Shown one piece after another: positions 2,788-44,200 of a stretch of DNA of 64,000 bases. The stretch's first letter is position 1. Every line of letters starts with the position of its first letter. The stretch is from positions 124,001 to 188,000 of IMG/VR virus record IMGVR_UViG_3300020477_000990. The stretch is one strand, 5' to 3'. The translations under genes and the position numbers were made by a program. Under the pieces are notes generated by a model. That model did not search any database. It saw nothing but the letters and a program-made list of their open reading frames with translations, and had not been told where the DNA came from.

Positions 2788-3185
2788 TTGTACTATCTGT
2801 GCGTATGAGCACACCCTTGAAAGAAGGGTACCCAAAAAGAGAAACCGCGTCTCGGATCACCGGGGAATCACCACCGAAAAAGTAATTAGTATATGTATAT
2901 CCACGGTCCTCTTAACCGTTAAAAACAGGGTAACCACCATTGATCTATGCTTCCCCATCATGGCCTATATTGTCGCAATTGCGGAGCGGTCTGTCTTTGA
3001 ACAATGACCTTCGGTCATTATCTCCGATCACCCGAAGCACTTATGCTAACGGCTAGTCGCACGTTAGCATGGCGTAGCTTTGGCTGGGTCGTCTTTGATC
3101 AATTGCTCCCTGAATATGTGATCACCATGCTGTATATCGGAGCGACAGCTTCGCGACCTGTTAGCTCTAGGGTGTCGCTAACAGT
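2788..3185 (+). ncRNA. Candidate structured RNA
   Basis: Stems TGTGC/GCACA, ACCCTT/AAGGGT, AATGAC-cUUCGg-TCATT, ATGCTAAC/GTTAGCAT, GGAGC(2983)/GCTCC(3105), TGTTAGC/GCTAACA; the cUUCGg loop favours the + strand. Confidence 0.4.
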
Positions 3186-3218
3186 CAGTCTTAGATAGAT
3201 ATACAGCTATATGGTAGA

Positions 3219-3271
3219 GACCCCGCTGTAAACCATAGGGACCCCGCTGTAACATATACAGACCCCGCTGT
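3219..3271 (+). repeat. Three GACCCCGCTGT direct repeats, exact 21-bp period
   Basis: Copies at 3219, 3240, 3261. Confidence 0.95.
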
Positions 3272-3305
3272 GCGGTCTGATGGATTAGTCAGGAATGTAG
3301 CTGTG

Positions 3306-3414
3306 CCGGGACTAGATCTAGTCATTAGCTCCTGATCTCCAGCTTTAGCTCCGGGACTATATGTTGTGGTGGCCTCGATCTATGCCTCTCATGCGTAGAT
3401 TTATTCCGGGACTA
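3306..3414 (+). repeat. Three CCGGGACTA direct repeats
   Basis: Copies at 3306, 3351, 3406; partial CCGGGAC at 3495. Confidence 0.9.
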
Positions 3415-3445
3415 TATATAGTGGTTTTAATTAGACTAATTTTTA

Positions 3446-3474
3446 TTGACTCATTATCGATAATATGCTATATT
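3446..3474 (+). promoter_or_regulatory. sigma70 promoter with extended -10 inside the non-coding element
   Basis: TTGACT 3446-3451, 17-nt spacer containing palindrome ATTATCGATAAT, TGcTATATT ending 3474. Confidence 0.7.
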
Positions 3475-3645
3475 AAATATACAACATGGGTCGCCCGGGA
3501 CACGTATTCCTTACCGTATGGGGTCGGGCGGTCAAGTCGATCAAGCGTACGATCCGGCGATCAGCGTATGACGAGAAACAATGATGGAGCCCAGAGATAA
3601 TAGTAGCTGTATGACGGGGGACGGTAGGGTGATACAGCTACACCT

Positions 3646-3747
3646 TCAAAGAGGCTCAAAGCACTCAAAGAGCTTCAAAGACACTCAAAGGACTCAAAGG
3701 CGCTCAAAGGGGCTCAAAGGGCCTCAAAGGCGGGGCGAGGTTCAAAG
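3646..3747 (+). repeat. Ten TCAAAG repeats phased at about 10 bp
   Basis: Copies at 3646, 3656, 3665, 3675, 3685, 3694, 3704, 3714, 3724, 3742. Confidence 0.95.
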
Positions 3748-3788
3748 AGGCCAGATGGCCCCTCCGGGGCCTATATTGAGATTTAGTC

Positions 3789-3840
3789 TTGAGATGTTGC
3801 AAAAATACAACACATTTTGAGATGTTGTAGAAATACAACA
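3789..3840 (+). repeat. Two 24-bp direct repeats TTGAGATGTTGyArAAATACAACA, each an internal inverted repeat
   Basis: Copies 3789-3812 and 3817-3840 differ at 2 positions. Confidence 0.9.
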
Positions 3841-4169
3841 GGTGTTGTATAAAAGCCACAAGTTACCGTAACTGCTGTAAACACATTTGGAACACAATTG
3901 GAACAAGATTTCAACACAATTGTTAATAGCTTATTGGCCACAATATGTTGTAGGGTGTGTGATAAACGCGACACAACATCTTGTATGAAAAAAGACTAAT
4001 AATATCAATGGTTTAGCACGGTGAAGCTGTAGCTGTGCTATATGTAGTCAGGACCTGACTAGATATTGTGCCATGGTAAAATGGTCAGAGTTCGGCCCAA
4101 CCTTTGAGTAACAGTCTATTTCTTTCTAAATTTTCTCTGCTCTAGTTAATTTTCGACTGGAGTTAATAT

Positions 4170-4198
4170 TATAATAGCATAGGTTTCTATATTGTCAA
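4170..4198 (-). promoter_or_regulatory. Leftward sigma70 promoter with 12-bp operator, no downstream ORF
   Basis: Minus strand TTGACA-atATAGAAACCTATgc-TATTAT. Confidence 0.7.
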
Positions 4199-4221
4199 GA
4201 GGTTAATTTAAATATTTTTGG

Positions 4222-4249
4222 TTGACACATTGCGTAACCGTGCTACAAT
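4222..4249 (+). promoter_or_regulatory. Early sigma70 promoter
   Basis: TTGACA 4222-4227, 16 nt, TGcTACAAT ending 4249. Confidence 0.75.
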
Positions 4250-4322
4250 AAAGAATGAGCCTGTTGTAATGAATCGATAGGTATACTTAGATGAAGCAGG
4301 CTCATTTAAATAGAAAGGAAAT

Positions 4323-4700
4323 ATGTCAAATATAAGAATAGCTTACTACAGTCACAGCGAAACACCTATATCAACACTTACTAATTGTCCAGGAGATGAT
4401 TTAGTTAAGGTAGCTAGAATGTTAGAAACAACTGCGCCAACGTGGGAAGATGCTAAGAAGTATGTACACTTAACGCAACACACGTTGCAAGAACACTATG
4501 GTGTAGATGGTTATGGTGATCCTTTATGTACTAGAATAAGTGGTGTAAAGAATAAAGAAAACTTAATTGGTTTGTTTATTCATATGAGATCTAAATGGCA
4601 CTTTAGTGATAATGGTATTGATTGGATCCCAACTGAAGAAGAATTTCCAGTCGATTCTACCGAGCCTTATAAAGTTGTTAACGGATTTGTTAACGTTTAA
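4323..4700 (+). CDS. Hypothetical early protein
   Basis: SD AGAAAGGA, promoter upstream, terminator downstream. Confidence 0.8.
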   Translation: MSNIRIAYYSHSETPISTLTNCPGDDLVKVARMLETTAPTWEDAKKYVHLTQHTLQEHYGVDGYGDPLCTRISGVKNKENLIGLFIHMRSKWHFSDNGIDWIPTEEEFPVDSTEPYKVVNGFVNV

Positions 4701-15004: not shown

Positions 15005-16165
15005 TGAAATTTATTTCGTAAAAGAAAAATAAAAAAATAAAATAATTTTCCCCTGGCCGACCATGTAAATATTCGCACCCTAAAATCGAGGAGACCTAGG
15101 CTATGACGGACGTTATATTTTTTGGGTAAAAAAGGAGAGGTGTAATATAAAGGGCGGTGCTAAAAAAATTGCAGTAAAAAATTTTTAGTTAAACATATAG
15201 AAATCTGTAATGTAGTATTTTTAATAGAAAACAACCCATATATCCAATATACCCCGCGGCAAGAACAATGATGAACTCAACAGAAACGACAGTAGATCAA
15301 CTGTTATAAAGATTGTTGTCCCCCATTCTTATGAAGCAGTAAAGAACTGTGAACTCACAATGAGCTACACAATGAATCCACGATGAAGCATTGTGATGAT
15401 GCTTAAAAATTAAAATGCTATAAAAAATAGCATTTATAACAATACCTCGCGGGAGAGGTATAACTTAATGGATCACTATGACGCTAAAATGGAAAACTGT
15501 GGTAACTGTTAAGGGCTCAACAATTATAGGTTTCTAACCTACAAATATCATGTAGCCAAATATAAACCACCATACAAGTGCTATTAAAATCAACACTATT
15601 GTTGCTATGTCATCACGCATAACACTATTTAAGCAGAGGCATTAACAAACAGGACACACGGGCTTTAAAATAGGATTAAAGGCTCTTATATACGTAGTAC
15701 TAGCTATGCTTATGAACTGTACGCAAATATGCGTTAGGCCTGTTTGTAGCATACTGCTACGGTGAAGTGATTAGTCTACGGAGTGTAATAAACTGTAACA
15801 ATCTTAATAGCTATTAGGCATGGTGGGGCATGGTGGTTGCTGTAGTTAAGAGTCTTCTGCGAGAGCTGGAAAAGGAACGTAAGTTCCGTTCCACTAGCGA
15901 GCAGATATATCCGTATGAACGAGCTATATTATATCCTTTTAATAAAGTTTATTAGATTTTGTAATTTTGGTCGCAAATACAAGCAAATACAATTATAACC
16001 GCCGCACATACAAACTATACAATATAAACCCCACATACACCGCAAATACAATATAATACTATATACCCCGCACATACAAAAAATCGCAAATACAAACTAT
16101 GCAATATAAACACCCCTACAAAAAAATTTTCGCATACACATAAAATACAATATACGCCCCTTGCG
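15005..16165. other. Second large non-coding element (candidate terminus / pac / origin)
   Basis: No ORF of 60 aa or more in about 1.2 kb; many short inverted repeats; repeat array at right end. Confidence 0.7.
15973..16150 (+). repeat. GCA(A/C)ATACAA repeat array, strongly A/C-skewed
   Basis: Exact copies at 15973, 15983, 16004, 16042, 16070, 16086 plus degenerate copies. Confidence 0.9.
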
Positions 16166-16176
16166 TAAATACTATT

Positions 16177-21013: not shown

Positions 21014-22195
21014 TTAATCCCTTTTGTAATATTTATATTCAGTAATGTCAGCTAGTTCTGGAAACACGTCTTCAAAGTGTTCATTTCGAAATTTATCTAC
21101 ACGTAGCGTCCAGTCAATAAATTTCATCCAATCATGATATCCATAATCATCTTGATTCATATAATCAATAAATGTTTGTATATCTTTATTTTTATGTTCT
21201 AGTAATTTATTAGAAATAGATCTTTTAGCATCGTTAGGTAAACATTTAATATTATAATGCATTGGATAGTGCAAACTATTTAGATATACACTTATACCAA
21301 ATTCTTTAGCCCATGCTAAAAATTCGGGTATGTATAGCACGTTAAAGACGTTGATTGTATGACATATACCAACAGTAAATTTTTTACTTTGTTTATTTTT
21401 AAATTCATTAATAACGTGTAATGCATTTTTCCATTTAGCAGGATGCCTTTGGTATTCAAATTGCTTACCAATACCATCTATAGAAAATTGAATGTCAACA
21501 GACTTAAAGTGGGGCCATATACTTTGCAATGCTTCATTAGGTAATTGTGTTCCATTTGTATTATAATGAATTCCTATGTTTTTAGCATAACCTTGTTCAA
21601 CGCAAAATTGTAATAACTCAAATTGTTCTTTAATTAAAAAAGGTTCTCCTCCAGTAAAGTCGATATATTCTAATGTTGGTAATAATTCTTTAAGCTCACG
21701 CCAAAACTTTTTGTTAGTTTCTGGCCATCCATGCCTAGTGTGTTTTTCTATAGTGTTATCTTCTTTATCATAATGTTGTTGTTCAGCTATCCATTTACTA
21801 GAAGAATGTGTTCCACATATACGACATTTTAAATTACAAATGTTTCCTAGTTTTAAATCAAGATATTTTAACTTAGGTTCCTGTATTATTTCCTTTGTAA
21901 AATGATGTTGATATTTTTTATTATCTCTAATTCTTTTTGAAACTTTACCACTTGCTTCTTCACTCCAGCATTTAGCACACCCACTAGGTTTTTTACCATT
22001 TAGGAATTCTTTTCTTAGGTTTCTATAATAATCACTATTCCAAGCGTCATCAAATGTGTTATTAGATAAATTGAATGGTTGCTTGTTTTTATCAGTCATG
22101 TTATTATTATACATACAGCAAGGTTTAATCCACCCTGCGGCTGTGGACTCTAATGAGATCCATGGTAATATACAAAATGATTTAGGTACGTGCAT
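21014..22195 (-). CDS. Radical SAM protein with N-terminal twitch/SPASM-like Cys cluster
   Basis: CNLKCRIC; FCILPW...PCC...CAKCW; FTGGEP; YNTNG; start 22195 is 5 nt after TAAATA. Confidence 0.9.
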   Translation of the reverse strand: MHVPKSFCILPWISLESTAAGWIKPCCMYNNNMTDKNKQPFNLSNNTFDDAWNSDYYRNLRKEFLNGKKPSGCAKCWSEEASGKVSKRIRDNKKYQHHFTKEIIQEPKLKYLDLKLGNICNLKCRICGTHSSSKWIAEQQHYDKEDNTIEKHTRHGWPETNKKFWRELKELLPTLEYIDFTGGEPFLIKEQFELLQFCVEQGYAKNIGIHYNTNGTQLPNEALQSIWPHFKSVDIQFSIDGIGKQFEYQRHPAKWKNALHVINEFKNKQSKKFTVGICHTINVFNVLYIPEFLAWAKEFGISVYLNSLHYPMHYNIKCLPNDAKRSISNKLLEHKNKDIQTFIDYMNQDDYGYHDWMKFIDWTLRVDKFRNEHFEDVFPELADITEYKYYKRD

Positions 22196-22227
22196 AACTA
22201 TATTTAACATAGCACAAAAAGGATAAA

Positions 22228-22629
22228 ATGTCTATAGAAGAAAAATATAAGAGCTATCAAGAACAATTAGAAGTACTTACTGAAAATATGGACAAATATC
22301 AGTACCTAATTAACATTGGGTCAAAAAATTCGATGCCAGAAGAATATAAATTAGACTCATTTAAAGTACATGGCTGTATGAGTCAAGTATGGCTAGTACC
22401 AAAATATAATGAAGGTAAAATAACTTTTATGGCTGACTCTGATGCACATATTACTAGAGGAGTAGTTACTATGGTAGCAGATATTTTTAGTGGGTCAACA
22501 GCAAAACAAATACAAGAAACAAATATTGATACTATAATTAATGGACTAGGTTTATTAAGTATTTTATCGCCCAATCGACGTAATGGTGCTTATAATATGT
22601 TTCATAAGGTAAAAGATTATGCCAACTAA
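22228..22629 (+). CDS. sufE: SufE family Fe-S sulfur-transfer protein
   Basis: KVHGCMSQVWL, ADSDAHITRG, LSPNRRNG. Confidence 0.9.
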   Translation: MSIEEKYKSYQEQLEVLTENMDKYQYLINIGSKNSMPEEYKLDSFKVHGCMSQVWLVPKYNEGKITFMADSDAHITRGVVTMVADIFSGSTAKQIQETNIDTIINGLGLLSILSPNRRNGAYNMFHKVKDYAN

Positions 22630-23434
22630 AATAGCTTGTATTGGTTGCAGTTGGACTGAAGGTATTGCAGTAGATGGTCAACTTATGGACCACCAAGATA
22701 CATATCCATATCTATTATCTAAATACTTAAGAGAAAATGCAAAAAATAATGTTATGTATAATGCTGGAAGGTCGGCGGCAGGAACAGAGTATTATCATTT
22801 AGTTACTGATTATCTAATTAAAAAATTTAATCCAGATATCTTTGTTATACAATTTACAACACATGATCGTGGAATATTACCGTTAGATCCAATTGATGAA
22901 AACGAGAAAAGATTAAATTTTGGTTATGATACTATTGATAACACTTATTGTAAAATTTGGGATAACAATAAAAGTATAATGCATTTAAGTCCTGGAATGG
23001 GTGCAAGTGCCAGTAAGCATAGTTCAGAAACACAATGGGATGGTTTAATAGATAAAATTTATAACGAACGAATAAAAGGAAAAATGGCTCCAGAAGTTGA
23101 ATTAGATACATTAAAAAAATATATTGCGTTGTGGTGGGAGCAATCAAAAAATTCAGATATACAAAAATATTTTTATTATTCTCATATGTATAGTTTGCTT
23201 GATTATTTAGAAGAATTAGGAAAGCAAGTAATTCCTTTTCATTGGATGAGATATAAACCAGAATTTAGAACTAAACTTTTTGAATTGAGACCATATCCAT
23301 CTATAGAAGGATTTTTAGGTAATAAACGTTTTAAAGATTTAACTCACGATAACGGATTTCATTTTGGTGTAGAAGGACACACTACGATAGTTCAGGAACT
23401 TTTAGGTCCTGCAATTCAGGAAATAATTCAATAG
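22619..23434 (+). CDS. SGNH/GDSL-like protein
   Basis: CIGCSWTEG, NAGRSAAG, DNGFH. Confidence 0.7.
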   Translation: MPTKIACIGCSWTEGIAVDGQLMDHQDTYPYLLSKYLRENAKNNVMYNAGRSAAGTEYYHLVTDYLIKKFNPDIFVIQFTTHDRGILPLDPIDENEKRLNFGYDTIDNTYCKIWDNNKSIMHLSPGMGASASKHSSETQWDGLIDKIYNERIKGKMAPEVELDTLKKYIALWWEQSKNSDIQKYFYYSHMYSLLDYLEELGKQVIPFHWMRYKPEFRTKLFELRPYPSIEGFLGNKRFKDLTHDNGFHFGVEGHTTIVQELLGPAIQEIIQ

Positions 23435-24611
23435 CATTTTCATTACGTAATTTATCAACCATATTAGTTCTTTCCCAAAACTTTGGAATAAGATGTGATG
23501 AATCTTTTTCATACATAAAGTGAATTAATTTATCATAACGTTTTTCTTTATTGTGTGTATACTTGTCAAACCATTCTTGTTCTTGAACGTATCTTTCTTC
23601 TAAACGTTTTTTCATTTCCATTGGAAGTATTTGTATAGAAAGTTCTTCTGGTACAAACAACGGATTAATCAAACTGCCACCAACAGCGTCAACCCAACCT
23701 TTTTGTATCCATTCATGATGAAAGTCTGGTACATGGAAACTATTATATACATTTAAACAAGTTGCAAGGAACACATATACATCTGGACAAATATCAAACA
23801 TACGTTTTCTATTTTCTTCAACTTGTTCCCATGATTGTCCTTTACGTAAGTATTCTCCACGTTTACCCATGCCATCTAACGAAGCACCTATTTTAACAGA
23901 TTCAAAACGATTCCATATTTCCATAACGTCTAATTTTTTAAATACCATTTGTGAAAAGTTTGTGTTGTACTTTAATCTTACGTGATACATTTTACGTTCA
24001 TCAAGTTTTTTTAGAATTCTATAATGCTCTTCCATAATTAATGGTTCACCACCTGCAAAGTATATTTCTTCTAAGCCGTCCATATATGGTTCAACTTTTT
24101 TCCAAAATGTTTCTTCGTCTTTATAAGGTCTTATAATTTTAGGCTGATCCAATGGGCCATATAATTTTACATTATCTTCATACCAACTTGATGATAAGTC
24201 TGGTCCACAAGTTCTACATTTAAAATTACACAAATTTGAAAATCTAAAATCAATATAAGGTAAGTTAATTTTATCAACTGTACCATCTTCTTTAGTGGTA
24301 CCAATCTTATCAAAATGATTTTCAAATGCTTCGTTGGCCCAAGTTCTTGTTGTATTCAATCCACTTGACTCCATGGAATAACAACGAGTACATTCTTTTG
24401 TTGGTTTATCTTTTAACATTGCTACACGCATTTTCTTTAACTTATCTGAATTCCAAATTTCTTCAAATGATTGATCTTTTAAGTTACCAAGTATCTCATT
24501 CATAGGAGCCATACAACAAGGTAACACTCTACCATCTGGCCATGAGTGTAAATGTGTCCAAGGTAACATACAAAATCGTTTTGATTTTTTTAATGCGTAA
24601 TCTTTATCCAT
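23382..24611 (-). CDS. Radical SAM protein with N-terminal twitch/SPASM-like Cys cluster
   Basis: CNFKCRTC; FCMLPW...PCC...CTRC; FAGGEP. Confidence 0.9.
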   Translation of the reverse strand: MDKDYALKKSKRFCMLPWTHLHSWPDGRVLPCCMAPMNEILGNLKDQSFEEIWNSDKLKKMRVAMLKDKPTKECTRCYSMESSGLNTTRTWANEAFENHFDKIGTTKEDGTVDKINLPYIDFRFSNLCNFKCRTCGPDLSSSWYEDNVKLYGPLDQPKIIRPYKDEETFWKKVEPYMDGLEEIYFAGGEPLIMEEHYRILKKLDERKMYHVRLKYNTNFSQMVFKKLDVMEIWNRFESVKIGASLDGMGKRGEYLRKGQSWEQVEENRKRMFDICPDVYVFLATCLNVYNSFHVPDFHHEWIQKGWVDAVGGSLINPLFVPEELSIQILPMEMKKRLEERYVQEQEWFDKYTHNKEKRYDKLIHFMYEKDSSHLIPKFWERTNMVDKLRNENAIELFPELQDLKVPELS

Positions 24612-33869: not shown

Positions 33870-34343
33870 ATGGCTTATAATACACCAGTTAATTACAGAA
33901 CTAATGACGTAACGGCATCCGGAACGATCTCTCCTTCTAGTAGTGGAGCCGAGTCAAGTAGCAACTATGTTACTGAAAGAATTTATAAAGGCTTTAGTTC
34001 TAATAATCCAAATGCTGTAAACAATATGCTTTATGATGCAGATTTAATTAAACAAGATATATATAACCATTTTATGACAGCTAAAGGTGAAAGAGTGATG
34101 CTACCTAACTTTGGTAGCATTATTTGGGATTACTTGTATGACCCACTTGACAGCCAAACAAAAAGTATAGTTGAAGAAGATGCTAGAAGTATTGTTGCCG
34201 CTGACCCTAGAGTAGAATTATTAAATATAGAGGTTGTTGGTTTTGAACAAGGAATAGTAGTTAATATTAGATTAAACATTTTACCTCAAAACATGGTTGA
34301 AGATATGGCCATTACATTTAACAACAATGGGAGTGCAATATAA
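33870..34343 (+). CDS. Baseplate wedge subunit, T4 gp25/GPW-like
   Basis: YKGFSS...DLIKQDIYNHFMTAKGERVMLPNFGSIIWDYLYDP...DPRV. Confidence 0.9.
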   Translation: MAYNTPVNYRTNDVTASGTISPSSSGAESSSNYVTERIYKGFSSNNPNAVNNMLYDADLIKQDIYNHFMTAKGERVMLPNFGSIIWDYLYDPLDSQTKSIVEEDARSIVAADPRVELLNIEVVGFEQGIVVNIRLNILPQNMVEDMAITFNNNGSAI

Positions 34344-37300
34344 TGGGACAACTAGTTAGACAAAGTAATTTATTTTCCGCAGAAGATTGGAAAGTAGTTT
34401 ATCGTAGTTTTAAAGATGCTGATTTTAAATCATATGACTTTGATACTATTCGAGCATCAATGTTAAATTATATTAGTAGAAACTATCCAGAGAATTTTAA
34501 TGACTATATTAATTCATCTGAATTTATAGCTATACTTGATTTGTTAGCTTTCTTAGGTCAAAGTTTATCATTTAGAATTGATATTAATGCTAGAGAGAAT
34601 TTTATTGATACAGCAACAAGAAGAGATTCAATTTTAAAACTAGCAAATATGTTAAGCTACAAACCAAAAAGAAATGTTCCGGCACGTGGCTTATTAAAAT
34701 TATCAGTAATTAAAACAAGTGAACCAATTACTGATTCATTAGGAAATAATTTAAGTAATACTGAAATTAAATGGAATGATCCAAACAATGCTAATTGGTA
34801 TGAACAATTTATTGCTGTATTAAATTCTTCGTTTATTACAACAAATAAATTTGGAAAACCAACACAGTCAGCAAAGATTAGTTCTATAACAAATGACTTA
34901 TATACTTTTAATAATACTAAAGCAATTTCAGTAACACAACCATTTAATAGTAAAGTAAACAATAAATCATATTCATTTGATGTTGTACCAGCAACATTTA
35001 ATACAGCAGGTTATATCGAAGAACAAACACCTGATCCATTAAATGCTTATAATTTAATTTATAAAAATGATGGAAAAGGATTTGATAGTGCCAATACTGG
35101 ATTTTTTGTTTATTTTAAAGAAGGTTCGCTATCATATAAAGATTTTAATTTTGATTCTCCGGTTGAAGATAGAGTGCAATCAATTGAAGTTAATGACATT
35201 AATAATTTAGATGTTTGGGTACAAGAAATTAACTCATCTGGGTTAACAGAAAAAACATGGTCAAAAGTTCCAACGTTATCAGGACAAAATATAATTTATA
35301 ATAGTTTAGCATTAGGAACTAGAACAATATACGAAGTACAATCAAAAGTTAATGATCAAGTTGATATTAAATTTTCAGATGGACAATTTGGTAATATTCC
35401 AGTTGGCTTATATAGAATTTGGTATAGAACTAGTGCAACCAAAGGAGAAGAAATTTCTCCATCAGATATTAAAGGAAAAGGTGTTTCGTTTAGTTATGTA
35501 AACCAAGAAGGCCAAACTTATGATTTAACAGTTCAATTTAATCTTGAATATAATGTTTCGAATTCATTTTCAAGAGAAACAATTGATGAAGTTAAAATAA
35601 ATGCAGGATCAAGTTACTATACACAAGATAGAATGATTAATGCAGAAGACTATAATGTATTTCCAATTACAAAAGTTTCTGGAATACAAAAGTTAAAAGC
35701 ATTAAACAAAACACACGCAGGGCATTCAAGATTTATTGACATTCAAGATCCGACAGGTACAGTTGCAAATGTTAATTGCGTTGGTGAAGATGGAATTTTA
35801 TATAAAGAACCAAATAATACTGAAAAGGTTTTATCAGTAATTGATACAAGTTCATATGATAGTATGGTATTAGAAGTTGAAAAATTAATTCAATCTATTC
35901 AAACACAAAACTTTTATTTTGATCCATATAAAAAAGCAATCGAGGCAATACCTATTAGTGGATATCCTTCTAAATTTGTTTTCTTATCAGCAGGTGATGA
36001 CATTGTATATTGGAGACCAATGCCAGTTGCAACATCAGGATATTATGGATATATTACACAATCGGCTCCAGCTGAAAGCGAATCTACTGCAAAAAATAAT
36101 ACAAACTTAAAGAAAGTTTGGAAAGCACCAACAACAGATAAGCATGGACTAATACGTCCAGGTTCAAGAATTGAATTTATTGATGACTATAATAATCCAA
36201 CAAAAACAATTTGGGCAACAGTTAAAGGTGTTACAGCAAATGGTGATCCTGCTAATTTAACAAATGGACCAATTCAATTAAGTGAATCAATCCCAGCTGG
36301 TTATAGAGCTAGAGCTATTATTCCAAATATAAGAACAACATTTACAACTACTGAAAGAACAGCAATTAGATCTAAATTAAGTGAGTCAACTGCAATTTTA
36401 AGCAAATTTGGTCTTGGGTATAGTTATTATAATTCTGCAACAAAAGAAGAGAGTTGGTATATTATTGATGCAAATAAAGTTGATGTATCAAGTGAGTTTA
36501 ATGTAGTTAACAATACAATTGGTGGCGGATCACAAGGAACAAATAACGATTCAAGTTGGTTAGTAAAAGCAGAGTTTACAGAAAAAGGTGCAAACACAAA
36601 TGCTAAATTTACATTTACATCAAGAGGATTAGATTATATATTTCAATCAACCAATGATGTTAGATTCTTTTATGTTAAAGATTATAAAACATTAGATAGT
36701 GCAACAGGTTTAACTATTCAAGATAAAATCGATATTTTAGCTGATGTAAACAGTAAAATTGAAGAAGGTACTGGAGCATCTGTTTTAGCAACAATTGATG
36801 TATCATTAACAGCACATCAGGCAACTACAGTTGGCAAAGATGAAATTGTAACTCAAGCTAATTCAGGAGCAAAAGGAAAAGTTAAAACGGCAGTAGCAGG
36901 TGGACAAACAATTGAGTTAACAGGAGTTTCCGGAACGTTTACAACTAACGTAGCTGATACATTAACAGGATCAGCAACAGGGGCGTTAAGTGCCTATGTA
37001 ACAAACGTAACAGGAGGTGCAGTTACAGGATTTACTAATACATCAGGAGATACATTATCGTATACTACTCCAGTTGGATTAAATTATACTACAGCACCTA
37101 AAATTTCAATGTCAGGAGGACTTGGTAGCGGAGCATCTGCAATTGCAACAGTTCATAAAGGTTTAGTAATAGCAATGCCTATTATTGATGGTGGATCAGC
37201 ATACAAGTTTCCACCAACGGTTACAATAACACCAGAGTCAATTGGTGCTAAATTAGATGAAACTATTTCTTTATCAGTAGTTGAGAATGCTTCAGAACAA

Positions 37301-38293
37301 GATGGTTATGTCGACGATAGAAAAGTAAAAGTTTCAACTTATGATTCAGATGAAGATGGTATGCCAGATCTTCCTTTAGCTATTGACAAGTTAGTTCAAG
37401 ACACATCTAATTCTAAAAATTTTATATTCTTTGAAAACTATACTGACTTTGATAACTATGTTTATTATAAATTAACAACATCAGTAACTCAACGTTCAGC
37501 ATTAACTAATAGTGGTATTGAATTTTTAACAACTACTAATAAATTTTATAGCGGTGGTGTATTACAAACAACAACAGGCTCTGAAGGAGCATACCAGGCA
37601 ACAATAGGAACTACAACTTATAAAGCATTTATTGGTAGATCATATTATACACCAGCAGGAATAAGTGATCCAATGTTTTTCCATTGGAAACATACTGCAC
37701 CTAGAGACCAAAGAATTGATCCAAGTATTAGCAATATTATCGAATTGATAGTATTAACTTCAACGTATTACGATAATGTTTTAAGTTGGACAGCTAATGA
37801 AAAATCAGTTAGTGAGTTTCCAGAAGAACCAACAGTAGAAGAATTGAATGAAATGTTTTCTTCTAATTTAAATTCATATAAAGCAATTGGAGATCAAATA
37901 ATTTATACTCCTGCGAAATTTAAATTATTGTTTGGTTCAACAGCGTCAGCAAATTTACAAGGTACATTTAAAATTGTAAAATCAGTAGGATCTACAATGA
38001 CAGATAATGAAATTAAATCAAGAACAATAACTGCCATTGATACATTTTTTGATATTACAAATTGGAATTATGGTGAAAGTTTTTATTATACAGAATTATG
38101 TGCATATATCCACAGCCAACTAGCTACACAAATAAGTTCAGTTGTTATTGTTGGTTCTGATGCAGAATCCAAGTTTGGAGATTTATTTGAGATTGTTTCT
38201 GATTCAAACGAGTTATTTTATTCAACAGCAACAGTTGACAATGTTGAAATCGTAAATGCATATACAGATCAAAATTTAAAAAAGGGGTCGTAG
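34343..38293 (+). CDS. Baseplate wedge protein, T4 gp6-like, with inserted repeats
   Basis: DFKSYDFDTIRASM...SSEFIAILDLLAF...ENFIDTATRRDSILKLA; QDRMINAEDY. Confidence 0.85.
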   Translation: MGQLVRQSNLFSAEDWKVVYRSFKDADFKSYDFDTIRASMLNYISRNYPENFNDYINSSEFIAILDLLAFLGQSLSFRIDINARENFIDTATRRDSILKLANMLSYKPKRNVPARGLLKLSVIKTSEPITDSLGNNLSNTEIKWNDPNNANWYEQFIAVLNSSFITTNKFGKPTQSAKISSITNDLYTFNNTKAISVTQPFNSKVNNKSYSFDVVPATFNTAGYIEEQTPDPLNAYNLIYKNDGKGFDSANTGFFVYFKEGSLSYKDFNFDSPVEDRVQSIEVNDINNLDVWVQEINSSGLTEKTWSKVPTLSGQNIIYNSLALGTRTIYEVQSKVNDQVDIKFSDGQFGNIPVGLYRIWYRTSATKGEEISPSDIKGKGVSFSYVNQEGQTYDLTVQFNLEYNVSNSFSRETIDEVKINAGSSYYTQDRMINAEDYNVFPITKVSGIQKLKALNKTHAGHSRFIDIQDPTGTVANVNCVGEDGILYKEPNNTEKVLSVIDTSSYDSMVLEVEKLIQSIQTQNFYFDPYKKAIEAIPISGYPSKFVFLSAGDDIVYWRPMPVATSGYYGYITQSAPAESESTAKNNTNLKKVWKAPTTDKHGLIRPGSRIEFIDDYNNPTKTIWATVKGVTANGDPANLTNGPIQLSESIPAGYRARAIIPNIRTTFTTTERTAIRSKLSESTAILSKFGLGYSYYNSATKEESWYIIDANKVDVSSEFNVVNNTIGGGSQGTNNDSSWLVKAEFTEKGANTNAKFTFTSRGLDYIFQSTNDVRFFYVKDYKTLDSATGLTIQDKIDILADVNSKIEEGTGASVLATIDVSLTAHQATTVGKDEIVTQANSGAKGKVKTAVAGGQTIELTGVSGTFTTNVADTLTGSATGALSAYVTNVTGGAVTGFTNTSGDTLSYTTPVGLNYTTAPKISMSGGLGSGASAIATVHKGLVIAMPIIDGGSAYKFPPTVTITPESIGAKLDETISLSVVENASEQDGYVDDRKVKVSTYDSDEDGMPDLPLAIDKLVQDTSNSKNFIFFENYTDFDNYVYYKLTTSVTQRSALTNSGIEFLTTTNKFYSGGVLQTTTGSEGAYQATIGTTTYKAFIGRSYYTPAGISDPMFFHWKHTAPRDQRIDPSISNIIELIVLTSTYYDNVLSWTANEKSVSEFPEEPTVEELNEMFSSNLNSYKAIGDQIIYTPAKFKLLFGSTASANLQGTFKIVKSVGSTMTDNEIKSRTITAIDTFFDITNWNYGESFYYTELCAYIHSQLATQISSVVIVGSDAESKFGDLFEIVSDSNELFYSTATVDNVEIVNAYTDQNLKKGS

Positions 38294-38296
38294 GCA

Positions 38297-41200
38297 ATGG
38301 CTGAGCAATTTGTTGCATCAAAACAATTACCAGTAGTTTTACAATCAACAAAGTTAAAAAACTTTTTTGATTCTACAGTTGACCAATGGTTTAAAAATGA
38401 AGACAATGAATTCACTCATGGATTTGTTGGAAGACGTGAAGGTAGAATTTTTGAACCAAAAAAAGATGCCTACTTAGGTGAACCGTCAGTTGATAGATTT
38501 AATTATCAACTTGAACCTTCGGTTGTAGTTAGAGATAATACTACACAAGGAATTTCATATCAAACTACATACGATGACTTTGTTAATAAATTAAGATTTG
38601 ATGGCGGCCAAATTCTAAATCATAAAAAATTATTTGAAGAAGATTATTATTCTTTTGCTCCACCTATTGACATTGATAAATTTTTAAACTATGCTAATTA
38701 TTATTGGTATCCAACTAAAGATGATTTGTCAACAGAAACAAGTGGAGTATTTCCAAGTTTACCAGCAATTGTAGTTGACGGGTCTGGTGCTACACCTATT
38801 GATCCAGCAACAGATATTATTGGAAAGCAAACATATACAGCACCAGATGCCACGGTGTTTACAAATGGTTTACAAATAAAATTTGGTCAATCAGTTACTA
38901 ATGATGCATATAAATTTAGACATACAATTACTGCAATAAATTTAAATGGCGGTGGATCTCAGTATGCAGTAAATGATAAAATTATAGTTTCAACTGTTAC
39001 TATTGGACACGTTACAAGTATTAATGCAGGGGGAACAATCACAGGAGTAGAATTAACAAATCCAGTTCTTGGTGATGGTGTTACTCCAACAGCGGTAACA
39101 ATCACAACTGCAAGTGGTAATGGTGCATTATTAACTGTTACTACATCACAAACTGATATTACTTACATAATTGAAGGTGTAGGAACAGAAATTAAATTAA
39201 TTGATATAAAAGATTTAAGGAACTTAAATGGACTAACAACTTCGTCAAAAGATTATCTAACAATGCAACGAGGTTGTAAAGATGGTAACATTTGGTCAAA
39301 AACAAACGGATGGGTACATAAAAATACATTAGACAACTATCCTAGTGTAACAACTACAACAGAAGAACAACACCTATGGGATACAGAAGGATGGGCAGGT
39401 CTTCAAACTTGGGATAGTATAACAGTATCGTCTACAACTGCATTTACAAAAACAACCGGTAGAAGAGCTACAAGACCAATTATTGAATTTAATAGTAATA
39501 TGGAATTATACGATTATGGAAAAAATCATATACTTGATGTTACAGTTATTGAAGATACATTAACAAAAACACAAATAGAATCTTATGCTAATATAACTAT
39601 TGATGGTAGGCAAATTCAAAATAGAGATACTATATTATTTCCAAGTGCGGCCAGCCAAGATGATTATGTAGCTTGGGATGGAAACTTGTGGGATCATGAT
39701 ACTGACTCAGATATATCAACAGGTGGCGGTGGACAAACTGGTGGTGATTTAGGTTGGGACGTATCTAGTTCAGCTTTTACAATTGAAGGATCTATTTGGC
39801 AAGTATCTGGTGTAGGAACAGCTCTAACACTTACACAGGTTATTACTAGTGTAAATGAAAATGATAAAGTTTATATTGATAAAGGTACAAAATATGGTAG
39901 TACTGAATGGTACTATGATGGATACAATTGGAATCAAGCACAATTAAAATCTAAAGTAAATATTGCACCATTGTTTAATTTATTTGATAATAATAAAGTT
40001 ATATTAAATGATACAGGAATATATCCATCGTCAACGTTTACAGGTTCAAAAGTATTTGGCTATAAAGTTGGTTCAGGAACCAACGATGCTGAATTAGGAT
40101 TTCCACTATCATATGTGTCTGGTAGTGGTCAAAGTGATATTGAGTTTTGTAACTATCTTAATGTCGATTCATACACATATAATACCTCAACTGCGATATC
40201 AGGATACAAGTTTTATAAGCAATTCTTGTATCCTGAAACTATTGCTAAAACTACAAACTATGAAGTAAATATAAATCCTAGTCAAAGAAATACAGCAAAC
40301 AATGTATTTTATATAAATGGTGAAGAAAGCCCAATATTGATTTTACAAAGAGGAGACACATATAATTTTAAATTTAGTTCTCCAGAAAGTGGAAGTACAG
40401 GTTACACAGGAGTAAATCATCCATTTTATATTTCAACAGGAACTCCTTGGTCATCGGGAACATATACTGGTGAATATACAACTGGTGTAACAGGATCTAG
40501 AGCATACTATGGTGGTGCTTATAGTACATTAGAATTTATAGTTCCGTCAAATGCTCCAGATACATTGTACTATCATTCTGCTACAAGTAATAATCCTGTT
40601 AAATTAGTTATAGTTGATAATCCTATTACTAAAATTAATGAAGCTACAGAAACATTTTATAGAAATGAATGGAACAAAAATTTAGGAAGTAAAAAATTAA
40701 AACAACGTTTAGTTCAAGAACATACAGTTTCAAATACAAATTTAACTACTAAACCAACACTAGAAGTTATACCAACATCTATTATAGATATGGAAGTATA
40801 TAAAAATGGAATTAGACAAAAGTTTGGTACAGATTATACTACAACTGCAAGTGTTATAATTAACTTTACAACTGCATTAGTTGAAAATGATTTTATTAAA
40901 ATTTATTACGAGACAAATGATAATACTCCAATTCGTCAAGTAAACTATTTTGAAATACCAAAGAACCTTGAATCAAATGCTTCAAATGAAGAAGTTGTTT
41001 CAGGAACATATTCAGAATTTTTCCAACACTTTGAATCTATAGTTCAAAACCAAATTGGGTTTACTGGTGATGTAAGTGGAGCAAATAATTATCGCGATAC
41101 TGAAAAAGATTTAGGAAAAGGTAAAGTTATTTTACAACATGATGGTTCACTAATGAAAGTAATGGCATTTGCTAATAATGATGACCTGGATATTATATCA

Positions 41201-44200
41201 TCAATAAGATATGTAAAAAATAGATATCAAGAGTTTCAATTAAAATTTTTAAATGCTGTAAATAAAATTCAAGTATCACAAGATGCTTCTTTGTTAACAA
41301 CTTCACAAATTGTTGATAAAGCAATTAAAAATATTACTATAGATAAAATTGCAACTGATCCATTTACATATTCATTTATGATGGCTAGTGGTGATAGATA
41401 TACTTCAGAATCTCATACTATTACAACAACTAATTATACTTGGGGAAATACAAACACATTCTTACAAAGTAGTGATACACAAGAAGTATTTAATCAAGAG
41501 CCTGGCTTAACAATTGCATCAGCATATGATCCAAAAAATGATTATGATAGTAAAGCATTATACGTTTATAAAAATAATGTATTAATGACATATAATCATG
41601 ATTATATTGTAAGTTATTCTTCATCTGGAACAAAAATTATCTTTATAGGATATGCGGCAAATAAACCAAAAGTTAATGATGTAATTTCAATTAGATATTA
41701 TACAACAATTCAACCAACTTGGATACCACCTACTCCAGCAAAACTAGGAGCGGCAAAAGTTTACCAACCGGTTGAAATATCTGATACTATAACATATTCA
41801 AGTGGAACTAGAAACTTTATACAATGTCATGATGGGTCATTTGTTTTAAAATATAATGATTTAAGAGATACTGCATTATTAGAATTAGAAAAAAGAATTT
41901 ATAACACAATCAATAGAAGATTTACTTCTAGGGATTATGTTCCATTATTAGAAATTAATCAAAAACAACCAAACTATTTTAATTCAACTAGTTGGTCTAG
42001 AAATGATATTATTAATTTAATGCGTCCAATATTTACAAGATGGGCATCAGAAAATGCATTAAACTATCATGAGAATACTGGTTATAATAATGTTCTAACA
42101 TTAACAGGAGTTTCTGGTACATTTAAAGTTGGAGAATCTGTTTCTGGTGCAAGTTCTAAAGCAAAAGGTGTAATTACAAAAATTGCAAGTAATGTAATAA
42201 CTATAAACCAAGTTATTGATAGTTTCCAACTTAATGAAAAAATAACTGGTGCAACAAGTGGTGCAGAAGGTACAACAGATCCAAATGGTGGTATTACTAT
42301 TGATTGGAAAGTAATGAATTACTCTTCATTAAAAGATCCAAATGGAAATAGTTTACCAGGACACTGGCGTGGTATGTATCGTTGGTTCTATGGAACAGAT
42401 AGACCACATACTCATCCATGGGAAATGTTAGGCTTTGCACAAAAACCAATTTGGTGGGATAATTATTATTCTTGGACGGCATCGTCGACAAGAGCAAAAT
42501 TAATAAGTGATGTTGAACAAGGTATTATTAGATCAGGCTTACGTGAAAACTATACTGATAAATCATATCTTAACGCAAATAATGTTTATAAAAAACCAAA
42601 CTTTGCGTCATATGTTCCGGTTGATAATACTGGAAAACTATTAAGTCCAAAAGAAATAGGAATTATTTCAGATAATCCTACAGAATATAATTCACAACTT
42701 GATTGGAAATTTGGAGATGGTGCTCCAGTTGAAAATGCATTTGTTGTTTCTCCGGTATATCAATATGCAATACAAAAAATATTATATTTGACAGCACCAG
42801 GTTTATATGTTGACTTGCTTTGGAATTCAAATGATATATTAAAATCATCAGCTGATGCAACTCAAATTATTGACTCTGTAAGTGGTAAAAGACCTAACAA
42901 TAAAAACTATTATGTCCATAGAGAAGTAGATGCTAATAGTATAACATATAACAGAGCTGGAGTACAAAACTTTTTAGTTGAGTATTTAAATTATGTAGGT
43001 AAGTCAGTTACAGATTCATTTGGTAATGTAATTAGAAACCTACAAACAAATTTATCATATCGTTGTGCAGGGTTTATAGACTCATCAACACTTAAAATTG
43101 AATCACAAGCATATGACTCAGTAAGTAATTCAACTAGCATTGTAATTCCAACAGAAGATATTAATATATCATTACATACAGGTGGAAGCATTGATGAAGT
43201 ATCATATAGTGGTTTTATTGTTCAGGTAGTTGAGCAAGGATATAAGATTTTTGGATACGATATAGTACATCCATACTTTAATGTACTTAGACCAATGATT
43301 TCAGGTAGATCAAAAAAACTTAGAATTGGTGGAAAAGAAGTTTCTCCAGTTTCTTATAAACCTGGAACAACGTATCATACAGATGAAATTGTTAAACATG
43401 AAGACAAATATTATCAAAGCATCACTACTCAAGTAACATTAACAACTGATACTAATCCAGATTTACAAAAATGGAAAGTGCTTAAAGTTTTACCAACAGT
43501 AGGTGGAACAGAAGTAGACCACTATTATGATTTTGATGAATCTAATGTATATCAAATTGATTATGGAACTGTATATAAAACTAGACAACAAGTTTATGAT
43601 GCAATAGTAGGATATGGAAAATATTTAGAATTAGTTGGATGGGACTTTAGTGAGTTTAATGTTGATATTGGAGAAAATAAAAATTGGGATTATAGTGCCA
43701 AAGAATTTTTATTTTGGAGTTTAGGAAAATGGGAAAAAGGAAATTATGTTACATTAAGTCCTAGTGCTGATAAATTAAAATTTATACCAGCTTCAGGTGT
43801 TGTCCAAAGTATTAAAGATATTAATAATGGTGTATATAGTGCATTAAACAAAGAAGGTTTTGGACTAGATTCAAAACAACTAGATGTTATACGTGATGAT
43901 GACATGGTAACAATATCACAAAAAGATGGAATTGGAATTTATGGATTAAGATTATCAGTTAAAGAAACTGAGCATATGATTACATTAGAAAACAAAACTA
44001 TCTTTAATGATACAATTTATAATACAATATTAGCACAAAGACAGCCACGTGTAAAAATTAATACAACTAGAACATTAGGATGGCATGGTAAACTTGAAGC
44101 AGATGGTTATATTATAAGTGGAACGTCATTGCTTAATAACTTTGAAAAATCAGTAACTGATTCTGGAAAATATTATGATATAGAATCTTCTCTTGTAGCT

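What the first reader, a model, noticed from the sequence alone, without database searches (positions are those of the whole stretch)
3219..3485. Iteron-like GACCCCGCTGT repeats at exact two-helical-turn spacing next to an AT-rich segment
Three identical 11-mers start at 3219, 3240 and 3261, while the intervening bases differ, so the spacing is conserved rather than the filler sequence. Three CCGGGACTA copies and an AT-rich stretch follow. A 21-22 bp period is characteristic of Rep-binding iterons.
Basis: partly seen in the sequence, partly recalled or inferred. Interest (0 to 1): 0.65.

Follow-up and report, generated by a model that had tools for sequence, protein, structure and literature searches.

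The report
Conserved repeat array, phage noncoding island
Three identical 11-base repeats in a marine jumbo phage are real and recur in dozens of related uncultured phages, so they are most likely docking sites for an unknown DNA-binding protein inside a non-coding control region that also makes structured RNAs; a classical Rep/iteron replication origin is not supported.

Summary
GACCCCGCTGT starts at 3219, 3240 and 3261 and occurs nowhere else in the 328-kb phage genome. The same 11-mer, in 2-5 direct copies, sits in non-coding DNA of about 60 related aquatic phage contigs. Spacer length is fixed within each sub-lineage although spacer sequences have diverged. It differs between sub-lineages: 21-23, 30-32, 36, 40 or 44 bp.

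The origin reading is weak. The 'AT-rich stretch' is a conserved sigma70-type promoter (3446-3474). It drives a structured non-coding RNA that is well supported by compensatory base changes. An AT-rich neighbour is not conserved in 46 relatives. The island has no DnaA box. The genome has no Rep_3, lambda-O, ParB, integrase or tubulin gene, and helicase and terminase lie more than 100 kb away.

The repeats lie in a 1.5-kb GC-rich island between a covarying hairpin domain and that RNA gene. Island-specific palindromes lie between the repeats and the promoter.

My best reading (0.35) is a fixed-geometry protein-binding array that controls the island's promoter. The rivals are a transcription-primed origin (0.2), a genome-end or packaging signal as at the PA5oct terminal-repeat boundary (0.2), and an RNA-level motif (0.1). 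The binding protein is unidentified.

The parts
2829..4300 (.). Non-coding GC-rich island (about 50% GC in a 31.8% GC genome) that holds all the parts below. It lies between + strand genes that end at 2732 and start at 4323.
   Evidence: Composition and ORF maps. It is the largest GC-rich island in the genome. There is patchwork homology to L068 over the whole length.
3219..3271 (+). Array of three identical 11-mers GACCCCGCTGT, starting at 3219, 3240 and 3261. The extended consensus in relatives is a-GACCCCGCTGT-a-(a/g)-g-g.
   Evidence: Conservation, copy number and spacing in relatives.
3003..3086 (+). Two hairpins upstream of the array. The first (3003-3019) has a TTCG loop. The second (3031-3086) has 21 bp and ends in the invariant GGCGTAGC.
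   Evidence: In alignment A2 (6 sequences), 98.4% of cells are paired. 11 of 21 pairs are changed on both sides, against 2.6 in shuffles. Slid controls pair 17-45%. Two invariant U.G pairs point to the + strand.
3129..3207 (+). Insertion found only in the window, closed by a 10-bp inverted repeat (3129-3138 with 3198-3207), directly before the array.
   Evidence: It is absent from L068-type and L140-type relatives.
3306..3425 (.). Three CCGGGACTA-containing palindrome-like elements at 3310, 3355 and 3410. Between them lies the CTATGCCTCTC block (3380-3390), which is homologous to the conserved 18-mer of relatives.
   Evidence: A fourth element is at 4057. All four genome copies lie in the island.
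3446..3474 (+). Sigma70-type promoter TTGACT-17-TATATT with an upstream TG. The predicted transcription start is near 3481.
   Evidence: Promoter scan. The promoter aligns in 16 sequences, of which the scan scores 10 distinct loci at 10-11 of 12 consensus positions, 154-177 nt after the last 11-mer.
3474..3650 (+). 5' domain of a structured non-coding RNA. Helices: 3509-3515 with 3623-3629, and 3536-3541 with 3552-3558.
   Evidence: In alignment A3 (13 sequences), 100% of 169 cells are paired. 39 cells are changed on both sides, against 13.4 +/- 2.5 in shuffles. Slid controls pair 16-41%. A U.G pair is invariant. RNA-library contig X19 covers 3346-3518.
3646..3750 (+). Array of 9-10 CTCAAAG heptamers at a period of about 10 nt, in the same transcription unit.
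   Evidence: Relatives carry TCAATG/TCAAAG or TCACT arrays at the same place.
4083..4112 (.). Invariant block of about 29 nt (GGTCAGAGTTCGGCCCA-n-CCTTTGAGTA) at the right side of the island, about 750-870 nt after the array in every relative.
   Evidence: RNA-library contig X20 covers 4059-4266.

Best explanation
The three 11-mers are docking sites for a sequence-specific DNA-binding protein that has not been identified. It is probably phage-encoded and binds one asymmetric site per monomer. Together with the island-specific palindromes 40-150 bp downstream, the sites build a nucleoprotein complex of fixed geometry. That complex sits upstream of the island's strong early-type promoter (3446-3474) and sets when or how strongly the promoter fires. 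The promoter drives a structured non-coding RNA that carries a heptamer array.

Shown:
- The repeat array and its lineage-wide conservation.
- The constraint on spacing.
- The promoter consensus and its conservation.
- The RNA structure, by covariation.

Inferred:
- That a protein binds the repeats.
- That binding acts on this promoter.
- What the RNA does.

The AT-rich stretch is the promoter itself, not an unwinding element.
For: 1. The motif is unique in 328 kb. It recurs as 2-5 direct copies in about 60 phage-like contigs with GC below 0.5. Unselected flanking positions are also conserved: A at -1 in 92 of 129 sites, A at +11 in 88 of 129, and G favoured at +13 and +14 (66 and 79 of 129). 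Together this gives an asymmetric site of about 16 bp.
2. Spacer length is fixed within sub-lineages although spacers are only 36-56% identical. There are 11 distinct 40-bp spacings, 9 of 30 bp, 6 of 36 bp and 8 of 21 bp. This points to a complex with defined geometry rather than independent sites.
3. Ten distinct loci of the window's and L068's sub-lineages carry a strong promoter 154-177 bp after the last copy. Six loci of four further sub-lineages carry a weaker promoter-like site at 196-217 bp.
4. Palindrome-like elements lie between array and promoter. In this genome they occur only in the island and are conserved in relatives.
5. The array has the same orientation as the downstream transcription units in all oriented loci.
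6. The motif pair is absent from 185,579 representative bacterial and archaeal genomes, apart from unrelated tandem repeats, nearly all in high-GC genomes. It is therefore not a borrowed host regulon site.
7. The repeat region itself shows no significant intrinsic fold (z = -0.96), and G-runs that could pair with it are not consistent across relatives.
Against: - No candidate binding protein was found. No gene family is universally adjacent. The small ORFs next to the array in some sub-lineages have no homologue in this genome and no family match.
- In the 40-bp sub-lineage a small ORF follows the array, not a recognisable promoter.
- A site used once per genome and conserved this deeply is also what an origin or a packaging signal looks like.
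- Spacings of 36 bp (3.4 turns) put neighbouring sites on opposite faces of the helix, which is unusual for simple cooperative operators.
- No experiment shows binding.
Confidence: 0.35

Rival explanations
1. Replication origin of a non-classical kind. The 11-mers load an unknown initiator or helicase loader. The adjacent promoter supplies an activating or priming transcript, as at T4 oriE/oriF, lambda, lactococcal phage c2 or ColE1 (comparisons from memory). The island as a whole would be the origin.
For: - The repeats are iteron-like in form, with 21-bp spacing here.
- The locus is unique in the genome.
- A strong promoter and a structured, purine-rich transcript lie next to the array.
- GATC is mildly enriched: 11 sites against 5.7 +/- 2.1 expected.
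- In the 36- and 40-bp sub-lineages an A/T-tract region follows the conserved 18-mer downstream of the array.
- The phage belongs to the T4 superfamily, where promoter-dependent origins are the rule (family knowledge from memory).
Against: - No Rep_3 or lambda-O initiator is present.
- The island has no DnaA box.
- The helicase gene is 120 kb away.
- An AT-rich flank is not conserved in 46 loci.
- The DNA downstream of the promoter is GC-rich structured RNA rather than an unwinding element.
- Cumulative GC skew follows gene orientation only.
- In some relatives the array is squeezed into a 50-90 nt gap between two small genes.
Confidence: 0.2
2. Genome-end or packaging signal. The island is the boundary of a long direct terminal repeat (the concatemer junction). 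The 11-mer array is where terminase or an end-binding protein recognises the DNA.
For: - The closest cultured relative, PA5oct, has a 39,080-bp terminal repeat full of early genes and abundant ncRNAs (PMC7318152).
- Some 30-170 bp outside its annotated right boundary lie three 12-nt tandem repeats and TCACTT arrays, just after a promoter cluster. More repeats flank position 1.
- TCACT arrays occupy the place of the window's heptamer array in relatives L074, L079, L080 and L081.
- The site is unique and directional.
- Metagenome contigs end within 250 nt upstream of the array in 12 of 45 cases, against 5 expected. Downstream it is 3 of 45.
- A DNA contig of another sample diverges exactly at 3218|3219.
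Against: - The large terminase gene is 101 kb away.
- There is no sequence homology to the PA5oct boundary.
- Contig breaks can equally come from strain mosaicism.
- Only contigs, not raw reads, were available, so no read-start or coverage evidence exists.
- The PA5oct boundary was estimated from coverage.
Confidence: 0.2
3. RNA-level element. The 11-mers are read in a + strand transcript, either the 3' part of the upstream hairpin domain or an intergenic part of an early operon. They would serve as binding or cleavage sites for an RNA-binding protein or nuclease.
For: - The array is flanked on both sides by + strand structures with covariation and invariant U.G pairs.
- It is always co-oriented with neighbouring genes, and in some sub-lineages it lies between co-directional ORFs or 11-41 nt before an ATG.
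- Some copies can form small CCCC/GGGG hairpins.
Against: - No RNA-library contig covers 2335-3336, whereas neighbouring genes are covered (weak evidence because depth is low).
- No consistent upstream promoter was found.
- The fold of the region is not better than shuffles.
- Pairing partners are not conserved.
- A strict spacing constraint is more typical of DNA complexes.
Confidence: 0.1
4. Chance duplication or slippage product without function.
For: Short tandem duplications do arise. Three unrelated low-GC bacterial hits of the pattern are plain tandem duplications that include their spacers.
Against: - The spacers differ while the cores are identical.
- The same core is kept in about 60 diverged phage contigs whose spacers are only 36-56% identical.
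Confidence: 0.01

Closest known systems
Iteron origins of plasmids and lambdoid phages (lambda ori, pSC101, P1 oriR, RK2 oriV; from memory)
   Same: There are three direct repeats with an asymmetric conserved core of about 11 bp. Filler is variable and the period is 21 bp. As in pSC101, palindromes and a promoter lie downstream. The locus is unique in the replicon.
   Different: - No Rep_3 or lambda-O gene is present.
- The island has no DnaA box.
- The AT-rich stretch is 145 bp away and is a promoter.
- Relatives use periods of 30, 36, 40 or 44 bp.
- The promoter drives an RNA gene, not a rep gene.
T4 origins: oriE with 12-nt iterons and RepEB; oriF/oriG with a middle promoter plus a downstream unwinding element (from memory)
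   Same: The phage belongs to the same superfamily. Repeats lie next to a promoter whose transcript could prime replication.
   Different: No RepEB-like neighbour was found. The DNA downstream of the promoter is a GC-rich conserved RNA structure, not an unwinding element. There is no sequence similarity.
Terminal-repeat boundary of Pseudomonas phage PA5oct (MK797984; PMC7318152)
   Same: It is the closest cultured relative by a conserved ATPase (47% identity). At the boundary lie a promoter cluster, three short tandem repeats and TCACT-type heptamer arrays. Abundant GC-rich ncRNAs lie among early genes.
   Different: The repeat sequences and their order differ, and no DNA homology exists. Whether the window's phage has a long terminal repeat at all is unknown.
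Directly repeated operators of P2-family C repressors and Cox boxes (from memory)
   Same: Asymmetric sites occur in direct repeat. The centre-to-centre distance is about two helical turns in one phage and longer in heteroimmune relatives. The sites control an early promoter.
   Different: In P2 the sites flank the -10 region of the promoter. Here the array lies 175 bp upstream. No repressor gene is adjacent, and this is a virulent-type jumbo phage without an integrase.
Short repeat arrays beside the T7 terminal repeat (SRL/SRR heptamers) and T7 tandem promoters at the primary origin (from memory)
   Same: The heptamer array beside strong early promoters in a non-coding control region resembles the T7 left end.
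   Different: The genome has no T7-type RNA polymerase. This resemblance concerns the neighbouring heptamer array more than the 11-mers.

Membership tests
Rep-dependent iteron origin | Three or more direct repeats of a conserved core at a constant period of about 21-23 bp | tested here: met
   In the window there are three copies at 21 bp. The period is kept in the nearest relatives L140, L151 and L166. Across the wider lineage the period is 30, 36, 40 or 44 bp.
Rep-dependent iteron origin | A cognate initiator (Rep) gene next to the repeats or elsewhere in the replicon | tested here: not met
   Rep_3 and Phage_rep_O are absent from the complete genome. Flanking ORFs have no such domains. No gene family is universally adjacent. 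An initiator of an unknown family cannot be excluded.
Rep-dependent iteron origin | An AT-rich unwinding element directly beside the repeats, conserved with them | tested here: not met
   The nearest AT-rich stretch is 145 bp away and coincides with a conserved promoter. Flanks in 46 related loci are no more AT-rich than background.
Rep-dependent iteron origin | Host-factor sites such as DnaA boxes | tested here: not met
   No TTATCCACA match with up to one mismatch lies between 2800 and 4300.
Rep-dependent iteron origin | Replication starts here | not testable with these tools
   This needs marker-frequency data, 2-D gels or a plasmid assay. GC skew is dominated by gene orientation.
T4-type promoter-plus-unwinding-element origin | A promoter followed immediately by an easily unwound stretch that holds a persistent R-loop | tested here: inconclusive
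   A promoter is present. The downstream 170 nt are GC-rich and fold into a conserved RNA structure. R-loop formation cannot be tested here.
Terminase recognition site (pac/cos) or terminal-repeat boundary | Coincides with a physical DNA end or a coverage step | not testable with these tools
   Only assembled contigs of the runs were available. Indirect hints are an excess of contig ends upstream and the analogy to the PA5oct boundary.
Terminase recognition site (pac/cos) or terminal-repeat boundary | Linked to the terminase genes | tested here: not met
   The large terminase gene lies at genome position 228.6 kb and the array at 127.2 kb. Linkage is not obligatory in large phages.
Transcription-factor operator array | A fixed position relative to a promoter across relatives | tested here: inconclusive
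   A strong promoter lies 154-177 bp downstream in ten distinct loci. Weaker promoter-like sites lie at 196-217 bp in six more. None was found in the 40-bp sub-lineage with an intervening ORF.
Transcription-factor operator array | A cognate regulator has been identified | tested here: not met
   No DNA-binding domain was found in neighbouring ORFs.
Partition centromere (parS/parC/tubC) | A partner ParB, ParR or TubR with a motor protein encoded in the element | tested here: not met
   The genome has no ParB_N and no tubulin/FtsZ family gene.
CRISPR mini-array | Repeats of 24-37 nt separated by unique spacers of similar length | tested here: not met
   The conserved unit is 11-16 nt, with only 5-10 variable bases between units here.
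Any Rfam RNA family | A match at or near the gathering score | tested here: not met
   There were no matches at gathering thresholds in the window. Between 2600 and 4350 only two chance-level hits appeared at E < 10.

The most novel reading that the evidence does not exclude
The 1.5-kb island may be a previously undescribed, self-contained non-coding module of aquatic T4-like jumbo phages. It would comprise two structured RNAs, a heptamer-repeat RNA or DNA array, and two classes of binding sites used nowhere else in the genome. It would act as the phage's genome-level cis site, either the concatemer junction (terminal-repeat boundary) or a transcription-primed origin. The GACCCCGCTGT array would be the recognition element of a new family of DNA-binding proteins.
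Probability: 0.3. Interest if true: 0.7.

Novelty: new variant of a known kind. Interest (0 to 1): 0.5.

Why it matters
Replication origins, packaging signals and regulatory RNAs of uncultured jumbo phages are almost unknown.

This work yields three things. The first is a sharply defined cis element of about 16 bp shared by dozens of marine and freshwater phage genomes. The second is a conserved promoter. The third is at least one new structured RNA with strong covariation support, all within one compact island.

The element can serve as a marker for this phage lineage. It is also a concrete bait for finding its binding protein by DAP-seq or pull-down with expressed phage ORFs. If the island proves to be the genome end or the origin, it would give a first handle on how this lineage starts replication or packaging. 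It would also help to orient and complete metagenomic assemblies of these phages.

Tried and rejected
- DNA similarity to 50,697 cultured phage records found nothing for the island or for the repeats.
- Rfam gave nothing.
- A literature search for the motif found only unrelated primers.
- The pattern with an exact 10-nt gap, and the protein at 4323-4700, found no loci in viral contigs.
- The four closest relatives by the ATPase gene (63-66% identity) have neither the motif nor a homologous island in the 10 kb upstream.
- A 16-mer from the left of the island (GTAACCACCATTGATC) gave mostly chance hits in coding DNA.
- The scan of representative bacterial genomes returned unrelated tandem repeats only, nearly all in high-GC genomes.
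- A promoter for a phage single-subunit RNA polymerase was considered because the conserved A-(A/G)-G-G follows the core. It was rejected because the genome has no T7-type polymerase and the motif is used only once.
- Integrase arm sites were rejected because there is no integrase.
- A centromere was rejected because there is no ParB or tubulin.
- A phage sigma factor of the sigma70 r2 type was not found.
- An attenuator built from alternating CCCC/GGGG hairpins fits only the L068 sub-lineage.
- Resemblances recalled from memory were too weak to pursue: boxA, Ter sites, Chi, uptake sequences and the sigma32 -10 element.
- The neighbour-gene approach to the binding protein failed. No family is universal, the families near the array are absent from this genome, and they have no Pfam or PHROG match.
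- The protein at 4323-4700 is conserved downstream but looks acidic and not DNA-binding. It was not folded.
- Records of metagenome contigs, for example the 286-kb contig behind L170, could not be searched for terminal repeats.
- GC skew gives no origin signal.

Full report
**Where the window lies**

The window is bases 124,001-188,000 of a 328,149-bp virus record from IMG/VR with 31.8% GC. The same DNA is held by marine metagenome runs from several studies. The phage carries T4-type baseplate genes and an NrdC.11-like ATPase. Its closest cultured relative by that ATPase is the Pseudomonas jumbo phage PA5oct, at 47% identity.

**Checking the observation**

They are the only copies on either strand of the whole genome. 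Only one other equally spaced triple of any 11-mer exists in 328 kb. Near-matches elsewhere in the window are at the chance level.

The CCGGGACTA copies at 3306, 3351 and 3406 are also unique to this place. They are the left parts of palindrome-like elements. All four genome copies of those elements lie in this island.

The AT-rich stretch (3416-3485) is 80% AT. That puts it only in the top 3.8% of windows of this AT-rich genome.

**Surroundings**

The repeats lie in a stretch of about 1.5 kb (2829-4300) that is poor in ORFs and about 50% GC. It is the largest GC-rich island of the genome. It sits between + strand genes that have no informative family matches.

The island is packed with further repeat families:
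- 9-10 CTCAAAG heptamers at a period of about 10 nt (3646-3750).
- TGTTGCA/TGCAACA palindromes (3795-3850).
- 11-nt AACACAATTGG units (3880-3922).

No Rfam family matches, and no cultured phage has similar DNA.

**Relatives**

A relative with a 54% identical ATPase carries two copies of the same 11-mer, 22 bp apart, at the syntenic place about 9 kb upstream of that gene. A scan for two copies 6-36 nt apart found 6 viral contigs and at least 120 metagenome stretches. About 60 of the metagenome stretches are phage-like, with GC below 0.5. The rest are unrelated high-GC coding tandem repeats.

Representative bacterial and archaeal genomes contain no such phage-like pair.

Across 129 distinct sites, unselected flanking positions are also conserved: A before the core, then A, A/G, G, G after it. 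Copy number is 2-5, and two relatives have a single variant copy.

Spacing falls into classes of 21-23, 30-32, 36, 40 and 44 bp. Within a class the length is constant although the spacers are only 36-56% identical. The value of two helical turns is not a property of the element as such.

**What the AT-rich stretch is**

It contains TTGACT-17-TATATT. In 16 aligned sequences of the window's and L068's sub-lineages the same promoter (TTGACA-17-TATAcT followed by TAAATA) aligns, and in the ten distinct loci where the scan scores it, it lies 154-177 nt after the last 11-mer.

The transcript downstream folds into a conserved structure. This includes a 7-bp helix that closes about 110 nt in the window (3509-3515 with 3623-3629) and a local 6-bp helix. 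Over 13 sequences all 169 cells pair. There are 39 double-sided changes, against 13.4 +/- 2.5 in shuffles, and slid controls pair 16-41%. An invariant U.G pair marks the + strand. The heptamer array follows in the same unit.

An RNA-library contig covers 3346-3518 and another covers 4059-4266. The repeats themselves are not covered. These are low-depth contigs, so this is weak evidence.

**Upstream of the repeats**

A 21-bp hairpin (3031-3086) ends in the invariant GGCGTAGC. It has 11 of 21 pairs changed on both sides among six sequences, against 2.6 in shuffles, and two invariant U.G pairs. A small hairpin with a TTCG loop (3003-3019) also covaries.

The repeats thus sit between two + strand structured domains. 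The repeat stretch itself has no significant fold (z = -0.96).

**Testing the origin model**

Tests across relatives and across the genome weigh against the origin model:
- In 46 related loci the 250 nt on either side of the array are no more AT-rich than ordinary blocks.
- The island has no DnaA box.
- GATC is only mildly enriched.
- The complete genome has no Rep_3 or lambda-O initiator.
- It also has no ParB, tubulin, integrase, sigma70-r2 protein or T7-type polymerase.
- The DnaB-like helicase and the large terminase lie 120 and 101 kb away.
- No gene family is universally adjacent to the array.
- The small ORFs beside it in some sub-lineages are absent from this genome and unannotated.

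**Other constants**

- The array is always co-oriented with the neighbouring + strand early genes.
- A conserved 18-mer (ACTATGCCTCTCGTCACC; in the window reduced to CTATGCCTCTC at 3380-3390) follows 30-230 nt downstream. In the 36- and 40-bp classes an A/T tract comes after it.
- Palindrome-like elements of the same kind as the window's lie between array and 18-mer in the 36-bp class as well.
- An invariant 29-mer (4083-4112) lies 750-870 nt downstream in every relative.

**Hints for a genome-end role**

- PA5oct has a 39,080-bp terminal repeat with early genes and abundant ncRNAs (PMC7318152).
- Just outside its right boundary lie three 12-nt tandem repeats and TCACTT arrays, after a promoter cluster. 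Repeats also flank position 1.
- TCACT arrays replace the window's heptamers in four relatives.
- Metagenome contigs end within 250 nt upstream of the array 12 times in 45, against 5 expected.
- A DNA contig of another sample diverges exactly at 3218|3219.

None of this is direct evidence. Only contigs could be laid, so physical ends could not be seen.

**Verdict**

The repeats are a real, lineage-wide, sequence-specific recognition array with constrained geometry. I judge it about 0.7 likely that they are recognised as duplex DNA by a protein.

My best specific reading (0.35) is a control array for the island's promoter and its structured RNA. A non-classical origin (0.2) and a packaging or terminal-repeat signal (0.2) remain live. 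An RNA-level role (0.1) is less likely.

The classical 'Rep iterons plus unwinding element' model fails three of its four testable defining features. The binding protein and the function of the RNAs are unknown.

Comparisons with lambda, pSC101, T4 oriE/F/G, T7, P2, c2 and ColE1 are from memory and serve as leads only.

Noticed in passing
window 3474-3750: There is a new structured non-coding RNA behind the promoter at 3446-3474, with strong covariation support in 13 sequences. It is followed by 9-10 CTCAAAG heptamers at a period of about 10 nt. Relatives carry TCAATG or TCACT arrays instead. It could be a protein sponge, a primer RNA or a DNA-level array.
   Followed up: partly
window 3003-3086 and 3129-3207: Two hairpins covary. 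One has a TTCG loop and the other is a 21-bp stem before the invariant GGCGTAGC. An insertion found only in the window is closed by a 10-bp inverted repeat. Together they look like a second + strand structured RNA domain without an identified promoter.
   Followed up: partly
window 4083-4112: An invariant 29-nt block is shared by at least 8 relatives. Its CCTTTGAG is the complement of the CTCAAAGG repeat unit. A minus-strand promoter-like site lies at 4198-4171, and an RNA-library contig covers 4059-4266. No covariation is available because the block never varies.
   Followed up: partly
window 3310, 3355, 3410, 4057: Palindrome-like elements [CG]ACTA-N4-T[AT]GT[GC] occur four times in the 328-kb genome, all in this island. 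They are conserved in relatives and are probably operators of a dimeric protein.
   Followed up: partly
window 3795-3922: There are two TGTTGCA-N5-T(A/G)CAACA palindromes and three to four 11-nt AACACAATTGG units. The palindromes are conserved in relatives.
   Followed up: no
window 15960-16170: A second repeat-rich non-coding stretch holds about ten CGCAAATACAA, GCACATACAA and ATACAATATAA units.
   Followed up: no
genome outside the window: G000 94,952-95,270; 1-76 and 328,075-328,149: The phage encodes 16 tRNAs and a permuted (two-piece) tmRNA with tag ADENLALAA. The 75-nt 'direct terminal repeat' of the record is a tRNA-Ala gene at both ends, so the circularity and completeness call may rest on a repeated tRNA gene.
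   Followed up: no
window 38297-50257 and 34343-38293: A 3986-aa ORF carries CBM_5_12 and E1_FCCH domains near its C-terminus. It is preceded by a 1316-aa ORF with no family match. These are probably giant fibre or adhesin proteins.
   Followed up: no
window 21014-24611 and 57682-60608: There are several radical-SAM domain ORFs, one of them QueE-like. This hints at a nucleotide or DNA modification pathway.
   Followed up: no
window 3218|3219 and 4112|4113: DNA contigs from an independent marine sample (X5) match the window only from 3219 onward, or only up to 4112, and then continue with unrelated sequence. Module exchange between strains therefore breaks at the edges of conserved island elements.
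   Followed up: partly
L350 (PA5oct MK797984 37,500-41,000): About 900 bp of 50-59% GC sequence lie just inside the PA5oct terminal-repeat boundary. The stretch is annotated as non-coding but contains ATG-initiated open frames. It may be unannotated genes rather than RNA.
   Followed up: no
L120 763-951, L139 803-1006, L080 2358-2528: A family of small ORFs (55-67 aa) lies directly downstream of the 11-mer array in three sub-lineages. It has no match in Pfam or PHROGs and is absent from the window's genome.
   Followed up: partly
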